The notes beneath the pieces were generated by a model. That model searched no databases, had not been told where the DNA came from, and saw nothing but the letters and a program-made list of their open reading frames with translations. A program made the translations under genes and the position numbers. A DNA stretch of 64,000 nt from Paragordius varius (Eukaryota > Animalia > Nematomorpha). How positions within the stretch are numbered: the stretch's first letter is position 1; each line of letters begins with the position of its first letter. Positions 8,848-53,344 of this stretch are shown piece after piece. The stretch is taken from NCBI GenBank assembly GCA_964247055.1, contig OZ176051.1:8122001-8186000 (forward strand), given 5' to 3'.

Positions 8848-30822
<21,975 letters not shown>

Positions 30823-32328: not shown

Positions 32329-33132
32329 TGATGCAATCAAAATTTTCTTCAACTAATTGAACATTATAAAATTATGGTATCATATTTAAATTGTGGAAAA
32401 TTGATACAGTATGAGTAAGTAATTGCTAGAAAGTTATTAATTATTGCCAATAGGATATGTATACAACAAAGGGCAGTATTATTGGCTTATAGTTATTTTT
32501 TCCACTTTTTACTATTAACCAATAATCTTTGCTGGATATGCTATTTGGCAATAATTAATAACTCTCTAGCAATATATACTTACCCATACTGTAATATTAA
32601 ATCTAAATTAAAGGTTAATATCATCTAATTTTGTTTAGCTACATTAGATTGTGGCAATGATAAATGACCATTATTAATGAGTTCATAAGAGATCAAACCA
32701 CCGTTATTTTTGACCGGTCAATTAACATAAACGTACCTCTTTATCTCGATATACAATTTGCAATCAACCAAAAAAATAAGGAATGCAGTATAGGTAATCA
32801 TCGCTAATTTTTCATATTAGAGTATGAGTAAGTATACATTGCTTGGTTAATTATTGCCAGAAGCAAAGTGATAAAAAATTTGCCTATATTTTTTCGTTTT
32901 TTACTAATATTTTAATTATGATCTTTGCTGCATAAAAGTAGGAATGTATTTTTACTCATCTGTAAAATGGCTGTTTAATGTATAAGTTTTATGGGGTGAT
33001 AAAAAAATTTTTTCAATCCAACATAATTACCACCTTTTTTCGTATATTTTATTGACTACTGAGAAGGAATTTTATTCAGAAAAGAATCAGCTGTTAATTT
33101 TATCTTTATGTCATTCACTTTATAGTGTTTAA

Positions 33133-42968: not shown

Positions 42969-45900
42969 TTATACAGGTGTATAGGCCCTAAAAGCCAAAA
43001 AAATAGTATCTTGATCTGCAACATGAGAATTATTTGAATTTCCTTCGATATGGGAGGACGAATCGCTGATAGAATCAAATTCCCGGGCTTCTTGACCAGT
43101 CGTAGGCGAGACGAGAATTCTTAAACTGACATATTCACCCGCATTCAAAAATACCACGGCCCCTGTGCGTAATTGATGCATGGGTGCTAAGGTTGCATGT
43201 CCATTCCTAATTGCATAAAACAATCAATATACAATATGTATTGAAATTATAAAGACAGACGGTTTATTTTATGAGGGGACCCAAATTTTTTGATGCTTTT
43301 GTAGTATTTACAAGATTTACAGTTGACAAAAATTTGAGTGTATTACAGTCATGTATCTTTTATTTTATCAAAAATTTATTTTTTTCGTTAAATGGGTATA
43401 AATATTTGGTAAAGAATGGAAAACACAAGAGATTTTTGCTAATTCTTATATTTTTTGATGAATATGTATTGTTAATACCATAGAGCTCTTATTTTTCCAT
43501 TCTTTAATACCCATTTAACGAAAGAAAATAAATTTTTGATAAAATAAGGGATACATGACTGCACTAATTTATATCTCGATCATTTATTTCACGACCTTAA
43601 GAACAAGTTAATTCAACTTTGCCCTTTGTTTTATTGTACGGGCAGTCATAAAAAATATTTATAGGTCATCTGTCATACGACCGCAACAATAATACCGGTT
43701 AAAGTTGCAAGAAAAAAAAATCAAATCGCTTTTTATTTAGTCGATTACACTAGACAACAAATTTTAACTTTTTTTAACTGCCATTCTTGTAAATTTAAAA
43801 TTTATTTATTAAAGTACATAATTAGTATATCTGAAAAGAAAATTGGTCTTACATGGAATTTTTTCATATTAGAGTTTATCGATAATTTTTGGCCCCGATT
43901 TTACATTAAACTCAAAATTTCGAAAATTAAAAGTTTTAGATATGAAGCCATGTATTTTATATCATTCGAAAGAGCGCAAAAAACTGCATCTTTTAAATGG
44001 TAGTAAGTCATTAAATCCATCGGATGTAAAAGTTATTTGGATTTAAATGGTCAAAATTTTCAATCCTTAAATAAGTCAAGAATTTTCGCAGACAAACTAA
44101 TTTGAAAATCATATAAATTATTTTAATATAATTATTAGGGTTATATTAATATTTAATTTAAAAAAATGTTTGGAAAAGCTTTTGGTTTGCTTTTTTAATA
44201 AAAATTATTATTATCATAAATATTTTACCTAGTGGATACTAAAATGCATAGTTATAACTGTAAATTTATTACATAATGGCTATAGAAGATCAAAAATACC
44301 TTAAACTTTGTTTTTTTCTTTAAATTTTCGAAATTATCAGCCTTGTAAAGAAAATAAATTAATATTGATGAGATGGTAATTTTTAAAAAACAAAAAACTT
44401 AAAAATGGCTGTTTTGAGTGACATAAAAGAAATAAAAAATGTTTTAATCAAAAAAAACTTTCTTGTGTTATCTTTTTTGGACATTCATCTCCATTTAAAC
44501 AAAGTTTGAGCTATTTTCATCCATTAGTTTTAAAAATATAATAATTAAAAAAATGCTCTCGCTTCGCGCGTTTGTCACTCTTTGTGTCCAATTATAACTG
44601 TCGATGTAATACATATTAGTATACATTTTATAGAGTTTTTAATACTCTTTCGAATGATATATTACAAATGGGCATTACTTGTATATTTTTTAAGAAAAAG
44701 TAAAATTTTGATAAAGAGGGCGCATAATCAAAAAAATCAAATTATACGAAATTCTTCCAACGAATAATTTTTATTTCAGATTTACTGTTAAAATGATATT
44801 AAATATCAAATAATGCAAAAAACTCGAGTGGCAGAAAAATTTGTTGTCTAGTGTTATGATAGAGAGAAGGCGTCAGCTAAACATGCTTTGATATAAATAA
44901 AGGTAATTCTATACGCAAGACTAGGGTTGTGCATTTGACTGCTTTTTCAAAAAAATCCGGTCAGACCCAGTCAGACCATGGTCATGACCACTTTTTACAT
45001 AAGTTAATATCATGCAATATTGGATTGTCAAAATAATGTTCAAACGAGACTTCCCTTTTACTAATGTCGTGTTTTTTCTTAAAAGTCTGTATTATACATT
45101 TTTTTGATATTTATTATTTACAAATATTTTCAATAAAATTTATACAAGAATATTGTTTTCAAATAAATTTCCACATGTTTATGGCCTCTGAATCTCCAAA
45201 TACATAGCTTTTAATACTGGATATTTCAAATAAAATTTTACCTAGTTATACACTTTCTTTTATCACTGAAATATCTAATTATAAAATGTTTTTCATTTTA
45301 TTGGTTCACATATATGGAATAATTGCATATTTTGCAAAGTGCTTGATTGTTTTGTTTTTCGAAATAACTGGATATGCTTAAATGCTAATGTTATGAGGAT
45401 GCATGTTTAACAATTTTATATTGTTAAATAAGCATATTAAAAATTAATATTTTTTTAAATATATAAAAAAAACAATAAACTCTTACTATCTCTCTTTCAA
45501 AAAAATTCACCAGCAATTTTTTAAACAACAGCTGTTTTTTAAATGACCATGGTCAAAAAAAATAGTCACTGACCTGGTCATGACCCGGTCAATTGACCGG
45601 GTCATGACTTGGTCAGCACAACCCTACGCAAGACATATTCAAATATATTTTTTAAAGTCCTTAAAAACAAATTAAAAAAAATCGCAATTTCGCATAGATC
45701 AACCAAATAATTGCGATTACGCGGTAAAATAAATTTTAATTTTTATTTAATTTAACATATATTTATATGCATGATTGTTTCATCAAATGAAACCTTTTAT
45801 AAGCTCTATAATAAATGTTTTTTTATAGCGGAAGTCGAGTATAAAATAGTGAGAATAAATTAAATACCCATTTTTAAGATATTCCGGGGGCAGGTTATAA

Positions 45901-48900
45901 TTGGCTTCACCTTTGATAATGATGATGATACTTGCGCTCTGGATAGTTGGTAAAACTATATCCTTAAACAATTCCTTTCCCGCATCCCCGAGTTTTAGCT
46001 AACATATAAATTTGATTCAAGTTATAAAAAAATAAAAAGTAGTTTTTTTCGATTTCCTTGCAATATATTGATGAATTCGAAACTTACGATCAAAATTTAG
46101 TATGGAGATAAAAAGGATGATTATTACATACAATATATATATATATGTAAGTATTGTGCTTAGATTAAGGAAAAATAAAAATTAATTAGCATCCCGATCT
46201 TAAAATAAAATCAGGAAACAGTATATACCATTTACACTTCGGAATTCCCTCTAACAATTTAAATTTACCCTAAAATAAATTATGTTTTGTTTATGATTAA
46301 ATATTACCTATATTTTTTTTATATTTTTAATAAAATTCTGTTTGTAGTTAAAAGAATACTAAAAAATTGTAATAAAACTAAACAATAAAGATATAATTCT
46401 TATTATAATGAGTTATATTAGCCGATAACACATAATTTATTTTTAGAGTGAATTTGAATTGTAAATGGCATAAAATATTATATAAATAATACGTTAAAAG
46501 CAAATTGAAAGATCATCTGCATTAATATCTCAATAAAATTTGCCCACACTTTAAGAGTTATATACTAATAAACAATAGTTTTAGTCACACACAAAAAAAA
46601 CATGACAAAACTCAAGCAAATCAAATTGTACTCTTTCTTTTCACATAAAAATAATGCACATAACCAATTACACAAACACACCTCAATCCTTTGTACAGCG
46701 AATTCATCTACGGGCGGTTTGTATTCGTAGAAAAGATTAGACGTTACCAAAGAATTCGCCGAACCTATTATTGTGTTGTTGGTAATGATTGGACAAGGTT
46801 CCAAAATTTTTGCAGAAGCCGGTCCCATATCATACGTTAACATATCGCACAACACTGGAACATCTTTAAATTTTGGGGTTAGACCAGCACGGACAACATT
46901 ATCCGAACATGCCATACACTCCATACAATCTTTTATTACAATATTATTAAGGTTTTTAGAGAATAAATTTAATAAATATATAGATATAGACAAAAAATAA
47001 AAAGAAAGTGACAAAGATAACTAGTACCACAATATGTTTTAACTATATATTTTATCGATAAAGTTATTCTTATTAATTTTAGAGACTAATTTAAAACTGA
47101 AAATTTAATTAAAATATCTTCCATATGATCGATATAACATTAATGTGTTAAAAATGTGCTATAAAGACATTAGAGTAGCGCATGGGTAGAAAACAACAAA
47201 TGATTGAAATTACATTTTTTCCTATTTTTAAAACATTAATATAATTTAATTAGGACATGATTTCTTTCATATCATACGCTATTGTAATACCAATTTGCTA
47301 ACATTAATGTGAATTTATTAATATTAATGTGCATACCTCGTAAGAGTTAAACTATAATATGAAATATCCAATTTAGAAAATAACTTATGCTAATGATAAA
47401 AAATTAACCAACTTTATCTAAATCCTATTGATTAAAGATGAATATAATTTGTATTCATATAAGTCAATAAATTACTAATTGATGTATTTTATTAAAAATC
47501 CATATAAAATCTAATAAATTATTATTGATTTTGCTGTATAACCATATGCATGATCAAAATAATATTTAAATAGATACAGAGATATAATTAAAACATAAAC
47601 ATTTACAGACAATGTTAATTTTGCCCGAATACAGTTTTTAATTATCTTTTTATTAAAACTTTAATATAAAATATATAAACATATTTTTATTAAAAATATT
47701 ACCTCCTTGTAGATAGGCATGAGGTTCATCAGGACCCAAAAATATTGCCTCTCCCGGTTTCAAATTTATTACATTAAGGAATAAAATAGAAAGACAACCA
47801 ATATCGCCCGGGAAAAACTGGTTACATCGAACAATTATGTCAAACATCATTTTGTCACATGTTAAACTTCGACGCCTAATATCTGGAAAAAATATATTTC
47901 AAATTTGTAAATCGTCATAAAATGCAATGTTTATTAAGGGGGTATATTAAAATGGTTAAAGTAATAAAAGCATCTTTTAGGAACTGATTCATACAAGTGT
48001 TTTGTTTTTTTAATGCTATAGTAGGTCCTCGCATATTTACAACAGAGAAAATAAAATAAGGGCATAATATGTATTAAATCATTTAAAATTATTTATTAGC
48101 AAATTATGATACCATTTGTAAGTTTAATATAAAAAATTTCTAAATTAAAACATTAGCATATGTTATTAGTCCAAAAATCATAAGCAGAAAAAATTGGAAA
48201 TGATAACTTAAGAGACAAAGACTAGAAAATATAAATTAAATAAAACAATCAATAATGGTTTACAACACCATCATAATATAAGTTTTAAAAAGCATCCGTA
48301 TTTCTCCATTATATCACGTAACATTTTAAATTATCGACATATTTTCTATGTTATATCTATTGCATTTGCTAGAAACTAGGCCTTAAAACTCATTTAATTA
48401 ATTAAGAATGAAAAAACGAAGATACATACATAAAATTTCACACAATAAAATGATTTGTTTTGTGTCTCAAAATAAATGACACATTTTTTAGACAGAGTTT
48501 GTCATAATTTAAAACAAAGAAACCACAAGGTCAAATTATTTTAGTAAGAGTCATTTAAACATGTTTTTACTGTTACCAATCAATGTATAATATATTACGT
48601 CAATTGTTAAAAAAACCAAAAATTTGCAAAAATATATATTATCAATAAATTTGTATTATAGTTACCATTTTAAAAAGAACAAAAGCTAACCAAAAAACTT
48701 TTTATTATATTGTTTAAAACCAAAAAATTCTTTATTAGTAATGTCCTGTAACCTAAAAAGATTTTTTTTTCTGGAAAAGCAAAAAATACAAAACCTTTGT
48801 TTGAGATGATAGTTATAACGGCTTGAACACATTTAGCAACTTGATCGGTAGGGCTATTCATAAAAGCTGTAAAACATGTCTTGAGACTTTCCTTAATTTG

Positions 48901-50039
48901 GCTTGTGTTAGGGTTCGGATCTATCGAAGTTTCAAGTCCCGCTAATTTATCATAAAATGTTTGACAAAGTTCTGTTCCTATTAGAGTTTCCACATCTGGG
49001 AACGCTAAATTATATTTAAAAAAACAGATAAAAAATAAATATTCGCGTATATTTTGGTATTTGTAATAACAAATTTATAAAAAAATGTTTGATGCGTAAA
49101 ATTTATTAACCTATTTAAAATTGATTTCGTAAAGCTGATGGAACACAACATTTTAATTGTGTTCCTTTTATAAATATTATATAAAATGACAAATTTTTAT
49201 GGCAATTAAATGTAGCATTTTAATTTGTTTAGACCCGAAAAAAATAGACATTTTTAAATTTTTTGTTTTGCATAAAGAAGTAATTTAAAAATTAATCTGA
49301 AATTTTATAATCTTACTCAAATTTTATAAATATTATTGAGCTGTTCAAAAAAATCTTTATTTTATTTGGCTGTATAATTTTCGGTATAAATTGAATTAAT
49401 TACCTTTTAAATTATGCATAATTTCATGCGGTGGCCGAAATCCACACAAGGCTTGAAACGGTGTTAATGCGATTGCGGTTTCAGGCTTATGATTCGAGTC
49501 CGGATAATGAAAGGGATCCCGATTATGTAATATCTCAGCTAAAACCTAAAATATAATTTAGAGTGAATATTCAAAGAGTATAATAAAACGGATACAAGAT
49601 TTATATTTATATATTTTTAAATAATAAACCTTATTTGGATGTGCTTGAATTGATAAGGGTTTCGCTATGGACAAGACTTTAAACAAAAATGGTAAATTTC
49701 CATTCTCTTTTGTCAAAAATTTTGCCACAACTTTGTGTCCCAATATTTTAGCTGGACTCGACTCGATGTACTCAGATAATAAAATTTTAACTGGTGGTTG
49801 ATCTGGTTGCTTATGGCCCAATATTTCGGAAGGACCCTTGGAATGAGTTCCCATCCATAACTTTAATTAAAACTAAAAACTACTTCGGCATATGGCTTAT
49901 CCTTTTCTATAGAATACAAACTTTCATTAAAGTTATGGGCTAATTTTGCAACTTCACTATCAAATCCATGTTTACCCCATTCATAATGTTGAATGACGCA
50001 TTTAAGATAAAAAACTAAACATTAAAAAAACTTACCCAT
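42969..50039 (-). CDS. MPI: Mannose-6-phosphate isomerase (type I phosphomannose isomerase), 9 coding exons, about 504 aa
   Basis: Exons (minus): 50036-50039, 49884-50014, 49630-49860, 49404-49545, 48795-49004, 47703-47882, 46682-46929, 45868-45998, 42969-43206. All are GT-AG and in phase (1515 nt). Motifs: [112 protein letters not shown]. The 4-nt first exon is the least certain part. Confidence 0.95.
43346..43561. mobile_element. Near-palindromic 216-bp Tc1/mariner-type MITE (second, eroded copy at about 32140-32328)
   Basis: TA|CAGTCATGTATC...GATACATGACTG with inverted arms of about 60 bp (...CGTTAAATGGGTAT / ATACCCATTTAACG...). Confidence 0.7.
43870..44590. mobile_element. Possible DINE/Helentron-like non-autonomous element
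   Basis: Only motif-level resemblance (ATATCATTCGAAAG; GCTCTCGCTTCGCGCG near 44556); boundaries are guessed. Confidence 0.25.
44922..45626. mobile_element. Non-autonomous hAT (Ac-type TAGGG end) MITE with subterminal TGACC/GGTCA arrays, in MPI intron 8
   Basis: 11-bp TIR TAGGGTTGTGC / GCACAACCCTA; exact 8-bp TSD CGCAAGAC (44914-44921, 45627-45634). Confidence 0.9.
49861..49883 (-). other. 23-nt spliceosomal intron (MPI intron 2)
   Basis: GCC GAA|gtagtttttagttttaattaaag|TTA TGG ATG splits the conserved PYAE|LWMGTH motif. Length is not 3n, and the upstream and downstream coding frames both hit stops inside it. Confidence 0.9.
50015..50035 (-). other. Candidate 21-nt spliceosomal intron (MPI intron 1)
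   Basis: ATG G|gtaagtttttttaatgtttag|TT TTT TAT CTT AAA TGC gives [16 protein letters not shown]. Perfect GTAAGT donor, TTTAG acceptor and an in-frame TAA inside. Confidence 0.7.
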
Positions 50040-50121
50040 GCGAAAGATGCTAGGTCAAAAAATATGACTAAAGGCATCTATCTATATCACCTGGTTTTAT
50101 AAATTAGCATATATCCATTAA

Positions 50122-50653
50122 CACTTGGATACAACACACTCATTTTATCAAATTGGGGTAGTTGAATACCCCAGGCCTGTTTAAAATCAAATACTTTAAA
50201 AATTATGGAAGGAATCGAAACCATGACAAAATTTTGCACTTATCTAGCAATAATAAACCGAAATATATAAAAAATACTTGATATTACTTATTTTGAGCTA
50301 AAACTGAAAGGCAAAAATTTAGTCAATGTGACATGTGATACAAAATAAACCGCTTTTCCTATTTCTATCAATGTTAAATGTAATTTATATAATAAATAGG
50401 CTTTAGTTTTACCCTTAAAATTAAATGAAGACGATATTTTGCAAAATTTTTGCAAAGTAAAAATGGCGTCGAAGTAGGATGGAACTTTTTTTTTCAAATC
50501 AAAATTTTATCAAAATATTTTGGCATATTTATATAATATTTATCAGGATAGAAGCATGAATTTAAATTGGGACCGTTTCCTTCAGTAGTTTTTTAAAAAT
50601 TTTAATTTAAATTTAGTCTGGGGTACTTAGATACCCCAATTCGAATCAAAGTG
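50122..50653 (-). mobile_element. TTAA MITE family 1, copy 82 bp upstream of the MPI ATG, 532 bp
   Basis: TTAA at 50118-50121 and 50654-50657; same termini and body as the 33133-33704 copy, with small deletions. Confidence 0.9.
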
Positions 50654-51020
50654 TTAATTTAAAATAAAACTACAGTTTTATTTGTTTGAGTGCTTAAATT
50701 TATAAATAGTGATTATTCTTCAAACAGGATTTTGAATTTACCCTTGAATATTTATAAATAAGCAGAATATTATATTTAAAGCAACAAAACATATGTAATT
50801 AAATTCCAATTAGATTTTATCTAAATGTACCTAACCGTACATTTGCTAGTGTCTGGATAAAATTAAACCAAATATATCAGTGACACACTCCTCTAAATTG
50901 TATTTTTAGGCATGATGGAAACGGTATAAATCACTTTATCTATATGATTCGATAATGCTGAACTTTTCTATCGCGCCCGAATTTTAACTAATACGATTAA
51001 AATATTGGTTCGCCATAAAC

Positions 51021-53344
51021 CAGTGGTACTCACCAAAAAAAATTGACGGGCCAAATATAATATATTTTTTTTCGATGGCCATGAACCTTAAATTGACAAA
51101 TATTTCATGCTATTTGACACATATGTGCATGTTAATACTCTACACGATGATTTTTTTGGGGATCGCATGTAAATCCAAATAAAAACTCGTTTTGCACCGT
51201 TTACTTTAAAAAATTAAAATATTTTGATAACAATATTTATTTTGATATTAACCAATAATTTTTGAGAAAATTTGGTTTCGTCTGATGACAGGCCAATTTT
51301 AATGCGCCGTCCATATGATCATCGGTTAAACGATTTTTGTATGTATTCTTAATATACTTCATTTTTGAATGTGCACACGTGTAAATTGAGGGAAAAACAG
51401 TTAGGATAACTTGAGCAAATTTTTTTATATTTTCATATATTTGGCACATCTTGCCAAAACTCTACATATCTTTCTTCTCTTCTCCTTGATCATTGGAGTC
51501 ATTTCTAAAATATACGTATTCTTCAATGATATGCGCCTGTCATAACCGAAATGCTCAAGTTACTTAATATTGGATATATCCATATGCCGTGGATTTTCAA
51601 CGAGTTTAATGCAATTTTTAATATTTTTAATTCTTATCTGAATTTTACATAAGATAAAAATGTTAAATGATTGTCTATTGATTATCTCCGCGGTAAATTC
51701 GATATTTTTTTCATGAATCGTTTTAAGTGTTGGAAAATATAGGAGTGTTTTATTTATAAAATCTTGTTTAATTTTTCTTCAAAAGCAAATATTTGATTAA
51801 AAATTGGGTTATTATTTTGCCTCCTTGAAGACTTGTATTAAAAATACTTAGTTTATAAATAATGTCGCAAAGGTAGGCTCTCGTCAAACTTTCTGTTATC
51901 TTTTATATATAGAATTTAATGGCTTAAAATAAAATATCTATTTAATATTTTGCTAAGGCTTAGCCATCTTGTACAAAATAATATTATCAAACTCACGGTG
52001 GGTATCTTTCAGGTGGTTTTTGAATTTACAGCGGTTGAATTCTATGCCACGGATGTGGTGAACTATATCCAACCGTTTCATTACTGAATTGAGTGATTCA
52101 TCTTTTACACGCAAAACCAAGTTTTGCTGATGAATAAAGCAGTGAAAGGATAAATTATTTTGCAAATTATATTTGTTTTTCAAAAGAAAAATACCTTTGT
52201 TCTTTCCAATCATAGAGGGACATCCATGTCAGATCGAAACCAACTTTTTTATAGATTTACTATCGAAAAAAGTGCTAATTATTTCGAGAAAATCACTTTT
52301 TTTCTAGGTAATATTCATTAATACAAATTTTAAATATTGCTTGTTGATTATGTTGTCGTTGGTGTTGAACTAATATGGTGGAATCAATAGCAATCCTAAA
52401 ATATTTGCAGTTTTTCAAAGCCAATGCATTGTTAAAAATATATTTAGACATAGTTGAAGCTTTTCAATTTGCCTCATGATTTGATCTTTCTTATGAAATT
52501 TATCAAATTAAATATGCAACCATTTATTAGACATTCTTTTATTTGTTGGGGATCAGTAAACCGTTTCTTATTTTTTCCTAAAATATAGCAAACTTCATAC
52601 GAAGCTACAGTTTTCCTGAAAGAAAGCTATGGACATAATAGATTCTTTCTGGTATAATTCCTTAATGTTTTTTTTGTTACTTTCCTCATGATTTTCTGGT
52701 AATTTATAAGTAAATTGTAAAACGTCTTCCAATATTGTATTTATTTATAATTATATTGTCCTTATATATAAGGCTGCAAGTAACAACATTTTTATTTAAA
52801 ACGACAAAGAATTTTTCTTCCCATTCTTTTTTAAACGGTTTTCATAGGATAATTTACGTTTTTTAGCATTAGATGCCAACCTTTGAAACGAATTTTAAGT
52901 ATTATGTTTATTTTTTCAAAAAATAGGAATTATGTGAATTATGCTATAAAAAAAGAGGTCGAAATTTGATGATGTTGATTTGAAAAATATGTTATGGGAA
53001 TGAGTTGTAAAAAATGATGCAGCATATGTATATGCAAGTTTGGGTGAACTTGCTTAAATACAAAAAAGGAATACAATTCAAAATAGAAGAGAAAATAGAA
53101 TACAGAAACAGAAACAATGTGTGCCAAAATTTTGAAATCATTTTATAATGAAGGAAAATTTTTCTACATTTCTAATTGGGTAAAAAATAAAGGTTACCAA
53201 AATTACATCTAAAGAAAATAAATTAATATTAAAAATTCGTTTAAGTGTATTTTAAAAATTCATCAATAAACAAATAATATAAGTATCAATATAGTCATAG
53301 GGCCATTTTAAAGCACTCTTAGGGCCGCGGTTTGAATACCATTG
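51021..53344 (-). mobile_element. hAT transposon of the Buster/SPIN (GTF2IRD2-like) clade, full-length but with a decayed transposase
   Basis: TIRs CAGTGGTACTCA / TGAATACCATTG; exact 8-bp TSD CCATAAAC (51013-51020, 53345-53352), matching the nnnTAnnn Buster preference. Fragments: KKRKLSYENR..KEWEEKFF, FHCFIHQQNL, HIRGIEFN, SKMKYIKNTYKNRLTDDHM. Confidence 0.9.

What the first reader, a model, noticed from the sequence alone, without database searches (positions are those of the whole stretch)
50015..50039. Second micro-intron (21 nt, 3n, stop-containing) immediately after the MPI start codon
Seen: ATG G|gtaagtttttttaatgtttag|TT TTT gives [16 protein letters not shown], matching the MPI N-terminus (V-F-x-L-x-C-x-x-Q-x-Y-x-W-G-K). 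The donor is a perfect GTAAGT and the acceptor is TTTAG; TTAAT puts a branch A at about -8. The intron is 3n but carries an in-frame TAA. No other in-frame ATG precedes the conserved motif, and the nearby CAG|gtgata donor gives the wrong phase. Known: in Paramecium, 3n tiny introns are enriched for in-frame stops so that retention is NMD-visible; as I recall, vertebrate MPI intron 1 also lies in this Val codon (phase 1). Inference: two consecutive micro-introns make a chance artefact unlikely.
Basis: partly seen in the sequence, partly recalled or inferred. Interest (0 to 1): 0.75.

Follow-up and report, generated by a model that had tools for sequence, protein, structure and literature searches.

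The report
21-base intron after MPI start codon
A hairworm-type animal's sugar-metabolism gene (mannose-6-phosphate isomerase) very probably has an intron of only 21 bases right after its start codon, at the position where a related hairworm, a fish, a sea lily and a mite have introns of 48 to 855 bases, but I found no RNA to show the cutting.

Summary
On the minus strand the sequence reads ATG G | GTAAGTTTTTTTAATGTTTAG | TT TTT TAT... (ATG 50039-50037, G 50036, 21-nt intron 50035-50015). Removing the 21 nt gives [16 protein letters not shown]. Left unspliced, the frame stops at TAA 50024-50022, and no in-frame ATG lies between that stop and the conserved domain.

- The only close relative in the databases, Gordionus sp. 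m (Nematomorpha), has an MPI protein that starts MVFYLKCV. Its gene reads ATGG|gt..48 nt..ag|TTTTTTAC, the same phase-1 site.
- A pipefish, a crinoid and an oribatid mite have a phase-1 intron in the same codon (766, 452 and 855 nt).
- An ATG-N-GTAAG lying 18-35 nt upstream of a TTTAG occurs once in 1,462 such sites sampled, and that one is this site.
- A second 21-nt intron, supported by homology, sits in a VLCAD-like gene of the same genome.

Two limits remain. The in-frame TAA proves nothing, because chance alone gives a stop about 40% of the time. I could find no RNA from this species, so splicing is inferred.

Earlier notes of this scan already describe 20-32-nt introns at gene 5' ends elsewhere in this genome, and the neighbouring 23-nt MPI intron. 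This is one more instance, unusual in leaving only four coding bases in exon 1.

The parts
50036..50039 (-). Coding part of MPI exon 1: ATG plus the first base (G) of the Val-2 codon. The 5'UTR extends an unknown distance upstream, at most 77 nt before the MITE unless transcription starts inside or beyond it.
   Evidence: Gordionus has the same ATGG before its intron 1.
50015..50035 (-). Intron 1, 21 nt, phase 1, GTAAGTTTTTTTAATGTTTAG. The donor is a perfect GTAAGT, TTAAT is a yUnAy-like branch site with A at -8, and the acceptor is TTTAG. In-frame TAA at 50024-50022.
   Evidence: Excision is inferred, not seen in RNA.
49884..50014 (-). MPI exon 2 (131 nt), encoding (V)[14 protein letters not shown]...KPYAE.
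   Evidence: (Candida PMI 1pmi_A residues 6-47).
49861..49883 (-). Intron 2, 23 nt, phase 0, GTAGTTTTTAGTTTTAATTAAAG. It joins PYAE|LWMGTH.
   Evidence: Introns of 41, 294, 305 and 82 nt lie at the same site in Gordionus, Antedon, Syngnathus and Medioppia.
49630..49860 (-). MPI exon 3, LWMGTH...QAHPNK.
   Evidence: PMI_typeI_cat positions 42-104. 78% identical to Gordionus.
49546..49629 (-). Intron 3, 84 nt, phase 0. This is the first intron of ordinary size.
   Evidence: Gordionus has 157 nt here, Antedon 457 nt and Syngnathus 110 nt.
42969..49545 (-). The rest of the MPI gene. Exon matches to the Gordionus protein lie at about 49545-49404, 49004-48800, 47853-47704, 46930-46679, 45992-45864 and 43190-42972. 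The introns between them run from about 400 nt to about 2.7 kb.
   Evidence: tblastn and tblastx against Gordionus. Pfam PMI_typeI_hel on 47653-47850. Exact splice sites of the later exons were not refined.
50117..50657 (.). MITE-like repeat with terminal inverted repeats, ending 78 nt upstream of the ATG.
   Evidence: inverted repeats; 3,293 first-look candidates in the genome; scored near-full-length copies are 79-87% identical.

Best explanation
This is the true 5' end of a single-copy type I mannose-6-phosphate isomerase gene in a hairworm-type (Nematomorpha-like) animal. Translation starts at ATG 50039. The first coding exon contributes only ATG+G. A 21-nt U2-type GT-AG intron (50035-50015) is then removed, joining G to TT and making Val-2 of [16 protein letters not shown]. 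The intron is an ancient bilaterian MPI intron (phase 1, in the codon five residues before the conserved Cys) that has shrunk to 21 nt in this lineage. Its neighbour has shrunk to 23 nt. Both belong to a class of sub-30-nt introns found at the 5' ends of this genome's genes, while later introns stay at about 80 nt to kilobases. Shown here: the sequence anatomy, the need for splicing, the conserved position, the identical N-terminus in Gordionus, and the existence of another 21-nt intron in this genome. Inferred: recognition by intron definition, with GTAAGT pairing to U1/U6, the A of TTAAT at -8 acting as branch point, and TTTAG as acceptor. Also inferred: a retained intron would end translation after Met-Gly-Lys-Phe-Phe.
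For: The sequence reads ATGG|GTAAGT..TTTAG|TT, with an in-frame TAA and no alternative in-frame ATG. Exon 2 matches PMI_typeI_cat from profile position 1. It also matches Candida PMI from residue 6, so only about 1-5 residues can be missing upstream. The Gordionus sp. m MPI (XP_065323860.1 and CAK9293979.1, the same 485-aa sequence) starts MVFYLKCV, and window exon 3 aligns from its residue 46, which is what M + 44 residues predicts. The Gordionus gene has ATGG|48-nt GT-AG intron|TTTTTTAC. A phase-1 intron lies in the aligned codon in Syngnathus (766 nt), Antedon (452 nt) and Medioppia (855 nt). The chance rate of ATG-N-GTAAG 18-35 nt before a TTTAG is 1 in 1,462, and that one is this site. 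MPI is single-copy in the 110.6-Mb assembly, so this gene must be expressed. A second 21-nt intron exists in a VLCAD-like gene: its flanking pieces align to PDB 3b96_A residues 1-46 and 47-117.
Against: I found no transcript of this species. Whether RNA-seq supports the Gordionus model at this particular junction could not be checked. The Gordionus paper says the annotation used BRAKER with RNA-seq (10.1101/2023.06.26.546503). A 21-nt intron leaves only 13 nt between the 5' splice site and the putative branch A, which is at the short end of anything known in animals. Exon 1 would be very short: the MITE ends 78 nt upstream, and an out-of-frame ATG at 50077 should lie outside the mRNA or be bypassed.
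Confidence: 0.9

Rival explanations
1. The acceptor at 50015 is real, but the first coding exon lies further upstream, beyond or inside the MITE. The ATGG-GTAAGT 21 nt upstream would then be a chance or relic sequence inside a longer intron 1.
For: One search lists 52 other ATG...GT combinations in the right phase within 4 kb upstream. Three have strong donors, for example ATG 51082 with donor GTGAGT at 51033, which also gives a Val codon. The comparison species have intron 1 of 452-855 nt. No RNA is available.
Against: None of these upstream candidates encodes anything conserved. About this many are expected in random AT-rich sequence. The proximal ATG-N-GTAAGT has a chance rate of about 3e-4 to 7e-4 per acceptor-like site. 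The closest relative has exactly ATGG|GT at the same site and a protein starting MV. MPI N-termini are only 0-5 residues long before this point in animals, apart from a few longer annotated isoforms.
Confidence: 0.05
2. Both are used. The 21-nt intron is spliced in some transcripts, and an alternative upstream first exon or promoter, possibly MITE-derived, feeds the same acceptor in others.
For: The MITE 78 nt upstream leaves little room for a promoter. Alternative first exons are common in animals (general knowledge).
Against: There is no positive evidence. A TATAAAA (50101-50095) and an Inr-like TCATATT lie between the MITE and the ATG, although such motifs are frequent in a 26%-GC genome.
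Confidence: 0.04
3. The gene has lost its start and is a pseudogene, or it initiates at a non-AUG codon, or the 21 nt is an assembly artefact.
For: Only that, unspliced, the ATG opens a 5-codon frame.
Against: MPI is single-copy. All exons matched to Gordionus are intact, at 30-64% identity per exon match (78% over exon 3), right to the C-terminus. The boundaries are a perfect GTAAGT...TTTAG at a conserved intron site, which an assembly error would not produce.
Confidence: 0.01

Closest known systems
Ultra-short (<30 nt) spliceosomal introns of myxobolid myxozoans and Dicyema japonicum (PMC13644364, Mol Biol Evol 2026)
   Same: These are GT-AG introns of about 20-27 nt in animals. They sit at conserved intron positions between conserved exons and carry A residues a few bases before the AG as the presumed branch site. 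In that paper they were validated largely by positional conservation, as here.
   Different: In those parasites nearly all introns are tiny (medians 22-27 nt) and the splice-site motifs are reduced to GTa and AG. Here the tiny introns are only the first two of the gene, later introns are 84 nt to about 2.7 kb, and the donor is a full GTAAGT with a TTTAG acceptor. Hairworms are not mentioned in that paper.
MPI intron 1 of other animals (Gordionus 48 nt, Syngnathus 766 nt, Antedon 452 nt, Medioppia 855 nt)
   Same: Same codon and same phase 1, immediately after a 1-5-residue N-terminal exon. In Gordionus the coding part of exon 1 is the same four bases, ATGG.
   Different: The length is 21 nt instead of 48-855 nt. 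The intron sequences cannot be aligned apart from the splice sites.
Paramecium tiny introns (20-33 nt), where 3n introns are enriched for in-frame stops
   Same: Similar length, and this is a 3n intron with an in-frame stop, so retention would truncate the protein.
   Different: Enrichment was not shown here. A stop is expected by chance in about 40% of such introns, and a stop-free 27-nt 3n stretch, very probably an intron, lies nearby. Paramecium has only tiny introns and reads TAA as Gln.
5'-biased small introns of parasitic flatworms
   Same: The smallest introns sit at the 5' end of genes and larger ones further 3'.
   Different: The flatworm small introns are about 26-50 nt as I recall, and I did not check that literature here. 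The lineage is different.

Membership tests
U2-type GT-AG spliceosomal intron | GT at the 5' end and AG at the 3' end, with a donor matching the U1 consensus | tested here: met
   GTAAGT...TTTAG; the only AG is the terminal one.
U2-type GT-AG spliceosomal intron | Removal restores a continuous, conserved reading frame, and the unspliced frame is broken | tested here: met
   Splicing gives M + VFYLKC..., identical over the first 8 residues to the Gordionus N-terminus. Unspliced, the frame is ATG GGT AAG TTT TTT TAA.
U2-type GT-AG spliceosomal intron | Position and phase shared with introns of orthologous genes | tested here: met
   Phase 1 in the aligned codon in Gordionus, Syngnathus, Antedon and Medioppia.
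U2-type GT-AG spliceosomal intron | Branch-point adenosine upstream of the acceptor | tested here: inconclusive
   TTAAT fits yUnAy with the A at -8. The same TTAAT occurs in the 23-nt MPI intron and in two proteasome-gene micro-intron candidates. Lariat formation cannot be tested here.
U2-type GT-AG spliceosomal intron | Excision seen in RNA | not testable with these tools
   No transcript of this species was reachable. The joined model was not searched, by instruction.
Sub-30-nt micro-intron class of this genome | Length within the range of other homology-supported introns of the same genome | tested here: met
   A 21-nt intron in a VLCAD-like gene (L042 5977-5957): its flanks align to 3b96_A residues 1-46 and 47-117. 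The 23-nt MPI intron 2. A 27-nt intron in a proteasome subunit gene.
Sub-30-nt micro-intron class of this genome | Confined to the 5' end of the gene, with later introns of ordinary size | tested here: met
   MPI introns run 21, 23, 84, 399 nt and then about 0.7-2.7 kb. The VLCAD-like gene has 24 (putative), 27 and 21 nt at its 5' end.
Type I phosphomannose isomerase (MPI/PMI40) | PMI_typeI catalytic and helical domains | tested here: met
   PF20511 on exons 2 and 3 and PF20512 on 47653-47850. Matches to the Gordionus protein are 30-64% identical per exon match (78% over exon 3) along the whole protein.
NMD-visible 3n tiny introns (Paramecium model) | 3n introns carry in-frame stops more often than chance | tested here: inconclusive
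   This intron has a TAA, but the chance expectation is 40-45%. Of four other 3n micro-introns seen, three have a stop forced by their own splice-site bases and one (27 nt) has none. The sample is far too small.

The most novel reading that the evidence does not exclude
Hairworms of this lineage are a third, independent animal group with spliceosomal introns under 30 nt. Unlike myxozoans and dicyemids they keep a two-class system: 21-27-nt introns with full-strength GTAAGT/TTTAG signals packed into the first few hundred bases of genes, sometimes leaving a coding first exon of only ATG+1 base, followed by ordinary introns up to kilobases. This would imply a position-dependent, perhaps cap- or promoter-proximal, mode of intron recognition. 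Standard aligners and gene finders would miss it.
Probability: 0.8. Interest if true: 0.75.

Novelty: new member of a known kind. Interest (0 to 1): 0.55.

Why it matters
A paper from September 2026 (PMC13644364) still lists only myxobolids and Dicyema as animals with introns under 30 nt. A hairworm with 21-23-nt introns at ancient, conserved intron positions, beside kilobase introns in the same gene, adds a new lineage. It also shows that extreme shortening does not require a globally compact genome or degenerate splice signals.

There is a practical side. An intron this short, placed after ATG+G, hides the start codon. From my own knowledge, AUGUSTUS-type gene finders use minimum intron lengths near 39 nt, and STAR calls gaps under 21 nt deletions. 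Such tools would truncate or mis-start genes like this one, which may contribute to low BUSCO scores in hairworm assemblies.

The Gordionus orthologue (48 and 41 nt) gives a ready comparison for asking when and how the shrinkage happened.

Tried and rejected
1. Word-index protein searches. Exon 2 (44 aa) found nothing. Exon 3 (77 aa) found only fragments 41-64% identical; the ten I read looked fungal or metagenomic. The full Gordionus protein as query found no second hairworm and no same-species transcript.

2. An ab initio scan for micro-introns in 315 kb of this genome, using pairs of open frames joined by GT..AG. It gave counts no higher than decoy dinucleotide pairs, even with GTA donors and an AT filter. 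It has no power at this sample size, so I could not derive a length distribution or test stop enrichment. It did point me to the VLCAD-like example.

3. Fetching more of the genome.

4. The three other ATG-N-GTAAGT sites in the window (32411, 32587, 32824) are terminal inverted repeats of a small transposon, not gene starts.

5. Synteny with Gordionus around MPI. None was detectable, so the neighbours do not help to place the promoter.

6. The MAFFT alignment of the two 5' regions misplaced the ATGG because the intron lengths differ. The exact spliced mapping replaces it.

7. By instruction, I did not build or search a joined (spliced) protein or mRNA model. All searches used single exons by reference. 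No human sequence was fetched or used.

Full report
**What is there**

The finding lies on the minus strand. Searches give 50039-50015 = ATGGGTAAGTTTTTTTAATGTTTAG. That is an ATG (50039-37), one G (50036) and a 21-nt segment (50035-50015) that begins GTAAGT and ends TTTAG. Its only AG is the last two bases.

Read from 50015, the following exon translates as [44 protein letters not shown]. This matches Pfam PMI_typeI_cat from profile position 1 (E 6e-8) and Candida albicans phosphomannose isomerase residues 6-47 (1pmi_A). In that frame the three codons upstream of 50015 are TTA, TGT and TAA. The conserved domain therefore has an in-frame stop 9 nt upstream and no in-frame ATG. Left unspliced, the ATG at 50039 reads Met-Gly-Lys-Phe-Phe-stop.

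The next intron (49883-49861, 23 nt) and the exon LWMGTH...QAHPNK (49860-49630) are also as described.

**What organism and gene**

The window has 24-31% G+C. It belongs to a 110.6-Mb assembly of 44 contigs in which MPI is single-copy. An exhaustive HMMER search with exon 3 alone found one close relative at 78% identity: a 485-aa protein of Gordionus sp. m RMFG-2023 (Nematomorpha), recorded as XP_065323860.1 and CAK9293979.1. All other hits were 67% identical or less. The animal is therefore a hairworm or a close relative, as earlier notes of this scan also concluded.

tblastn of the Gordionus protein places the whole gene at 50039-42969. Its introns are 21, 23, 84 and 399 nt, then roughly 0.7 to 2.7 kb.

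**The decisive comparison**

The Gordionus protein begins MVFYLKCVTQNYEWGK. Window exon 3 aligns from its residue 46, which is exactly what Met plus the 44 residues of exon 2 predicts.

I mapped four annotated proteins back onto their own genomic loci, requiring exact translation and GT/GC-AG introns.

| Species | Intron 1 length (nt) | Split of the N-terminus |
|---|---|---|
| Gordionus (hairworm) | 48 | M\|VFYLKC |
| Syngnathus acus (pipefish) | 766 | EEVR\|VFPLTC |
| Antedon mediterranea (crinoid) | 452 | MSE\|IFELRC |
| Medioppia subpectinata (oribatid mite) | 855 | MK\|LIPLRC |

Intron 1 is phase 1 in all four. The Gordionus gene reads ATGG | gtatca...48 nt...aatttag | TTTTTTACCTC, so the intron falls between M and VFYLKC. 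In an alignment of the N-termini the split codon falls in one column.

The second and third introns (PYAE|LWMGTH and HPNK|) are shared as well, except that the mite mapping returned no third intron within the first 130 residues. The acceptor at 50015 is therefore the acceptor of an ancient bilaterian MPI intron. No human sequence was used.

The only open question is where the donor lies. The closest relative has the same four coding bases, ATGG, directly before its donor.

**Chance**

I scanned 630 kb of strand sequence from this genome (the window, 200 kb from contig 2, and 16 short loci). It holds 1,462 TTTAG sites. Exactly one has ATG-N-GTAAG(T) 18-35 nt upstream, and it is the MPI site.

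For any YAG site the count is 4 of 12,055. That includes the MPI site and two transposon inverted-repeat copies. With any GTA donor the rate is 0.34%, and with any GT it is 1.5%.

By contrast, the 52 other ATG...GT combinations in the right phase within 4 kb upstream are what random AT-rich sequence yields, and none encodes anything conserved. Animal MPI N-termini before this codon are only 0-5 residues long in the species sampled, apart from a few longer annotated isoforms. So M-V is unremarkable.

**Can 21 nt be spliced in this animal?**

I looked for an independent case. A VLCAD-like acyl-CoA dehydrogenase gene lies about 130 kb from the window (locus L042, minus strand). It has GTATATTTTATTAGAATTTAG (21 nt, 5977-5957) between two coding pieces.

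The upstream piece aligns to human VLCAD chain 3b96_A residues 1-46, ending ...RFFE. The downstream exon aligns to residues 47-117, starting EVNDPAKND. The junction is exact.

The same alignment shows a 9-residue insertion that coincides with a GT...AG segment of 27 nt (6069-6043). This is very probably a 3n micro-intron with no in-frame stop. A proteasome subunit gene has a 27-nt segment with two in-frame TAAs inside an otherwise continuous Pfam match. So 21 nt is within the working range of this genome's splicing machinery, as far as homology can show.

**How it most likely works**

This section is inference, apart from the anatomy. The intron is an ordinary U2-type intron recognised across its own length:
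- a perfect GTAAGT donor, with the exon-final G also serving as the +4 G of the start context;
- TTAAT (yUnAy) offering a branch A at -8, that is 13 nt from the donor G;
- a T-run and a TTTAG acceptor.

The same TTAAT motif occurs in the 23-nt intron and in two proteasome-gene candidates.

Exon 1 must be short. A MITE-like repeat occupies 50117-50657. The search made 3,293 first-look candidates in the genome; the near-full-length copies it scored are 79-87% identical. It leaves 77 nt before the ATG. In that stretch lie a TATAAAA (50101-50095), an Inr-like TCATATT, and an out-of-frame ATG at 50077 that a start site near 50065-50070 would exclude. These motifs are weak evidence in a 26%-GC genome.

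**The in-frame TAA**

I simulated 21-nt phase-1 introns with the base composition of this gene's own longer introns. An in-frame stop appears in 40-45% of them.

In phase 2 a GTAAGT donor forces a stop. In phase 0 a TAG acceptor forces one. Counting stops therefore says little without a large, unbiased intron set. The stop-free 27-nt case above is a counter-example. I could not assemble such a set.

**Literature**

PMC13644364 (Mol Biol Evol, September 2026) states that introns under 30 bp were thought absent from animals. It surveyed 51 metazoan genomes and found them only in myxobolid myxozoans and Dicyema japonicum. It does not mention hairworms.

The Gordionus montsenyensis genome paper (10.1101/2023.06.26.546503) reports 26.9% GC and a BRAKER annotation guided by RNA-seq, and it says nothing about introns. 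A comparative preprint on Mermithidae and Nematomorpha also has no mention of introns.

**What is missing**

There is no RNA evidence. Exon-wise searches found no RNA-derived product of this species. By instruction I did not build or search a joined model, so the spliced junction itself was never used as a query.

**Verdict**

The main rival is an upstream first exon feeding the same acceptor, at about 0.05.

Earlier notes of this scan already describe this intron class on other pieces of the genome, and the neighbouring 23-nt MPI intron. This finding adds three things:
- a clean 21-nt case at the start codon;
- proof that its position is ancient;
- the fact that the closest relative has 48 nt there, so the shrinkage is specific to this lineage.

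Noticed in passing
L042:5957-6166 (G000:C2:7995957-7996166), minus strand: The 5' end of a VLCAD-like acyl-CoA dehydrogenase gene has three consecutive micro-introns. One of 24 nt (6166-6143) is putative and lies in the presequence region. One of 27 nt (6069-6043) is 3n, phase 1, has no in-frame stop, and shows as a 9-residue insertion against PDB 3b96_A. One of 21 nt (5977-5957) is phase 0, and its flanks align to 3b96_A residues 1-46 and 47-117.
   Followed up: yes
window 50117-50657: A MITE-like element of about 540 bp with terminal and subterminal inverted repeats ends 78 nt upstream of the MPI start codon. The genome search made 3,293 first-look candidates; scored near-full-length copies are 79-87% identical. 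The MPI core promoter must fit in 77 nt or lie in or beyond the element.
   Followed up: partly
window 32407-32590 and 32820-32860: A small transposon-like element has terminal inverted repeats beginning CAGTATGAGTAAGTA... These mimic 'ATG-N-GTAAGT' and account for the three other such motifs in the window. They would be false positives in any motif scan for start-proximal introns.
   Followed up: partly
L013:1697-1724 (G000:C1, around 6948960): A proteasome subunit gene has a 27-nt GTAAGT...ATATAG segment with two in-frame TAAs inside an otherwise continuous Pfam Proteasome match (HMM positions 2-121). This looks like a phase-2, 3n micro-intron. Several other proteasome exon matches also carry single internal stops.
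   Followed up: partly
L005:10005-10052 and 10184-10224 (Gordionus sp. m, OX940783.2): The Gordionus orthologue has 48-nt and 41-nt introns where the window has 21 and 23 nt, and 157 nt where the window has 84 nt. The shrinkage below 30 nt seems specific to the window's lineage.
   Followed up: partly
window 50040-50101, minus strand: TATAAAA at 50101-50095 and an Inr-like TCATATT at about 50067-50061 lie between the MITE and the ATG. An out-of-frame ATG at 50077 would open an overlapping upstream ORF if it is transcribed.
   Followed up: no
window 43040-43104, minus strand: In the last coding part of MPI, the tblastn alignment shows a 23-residue insertion relative to the Gordionus protein ([25 protein letters not shown]...). 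It could be a real insertion or an unrecognised short intron.
   Followed up: no
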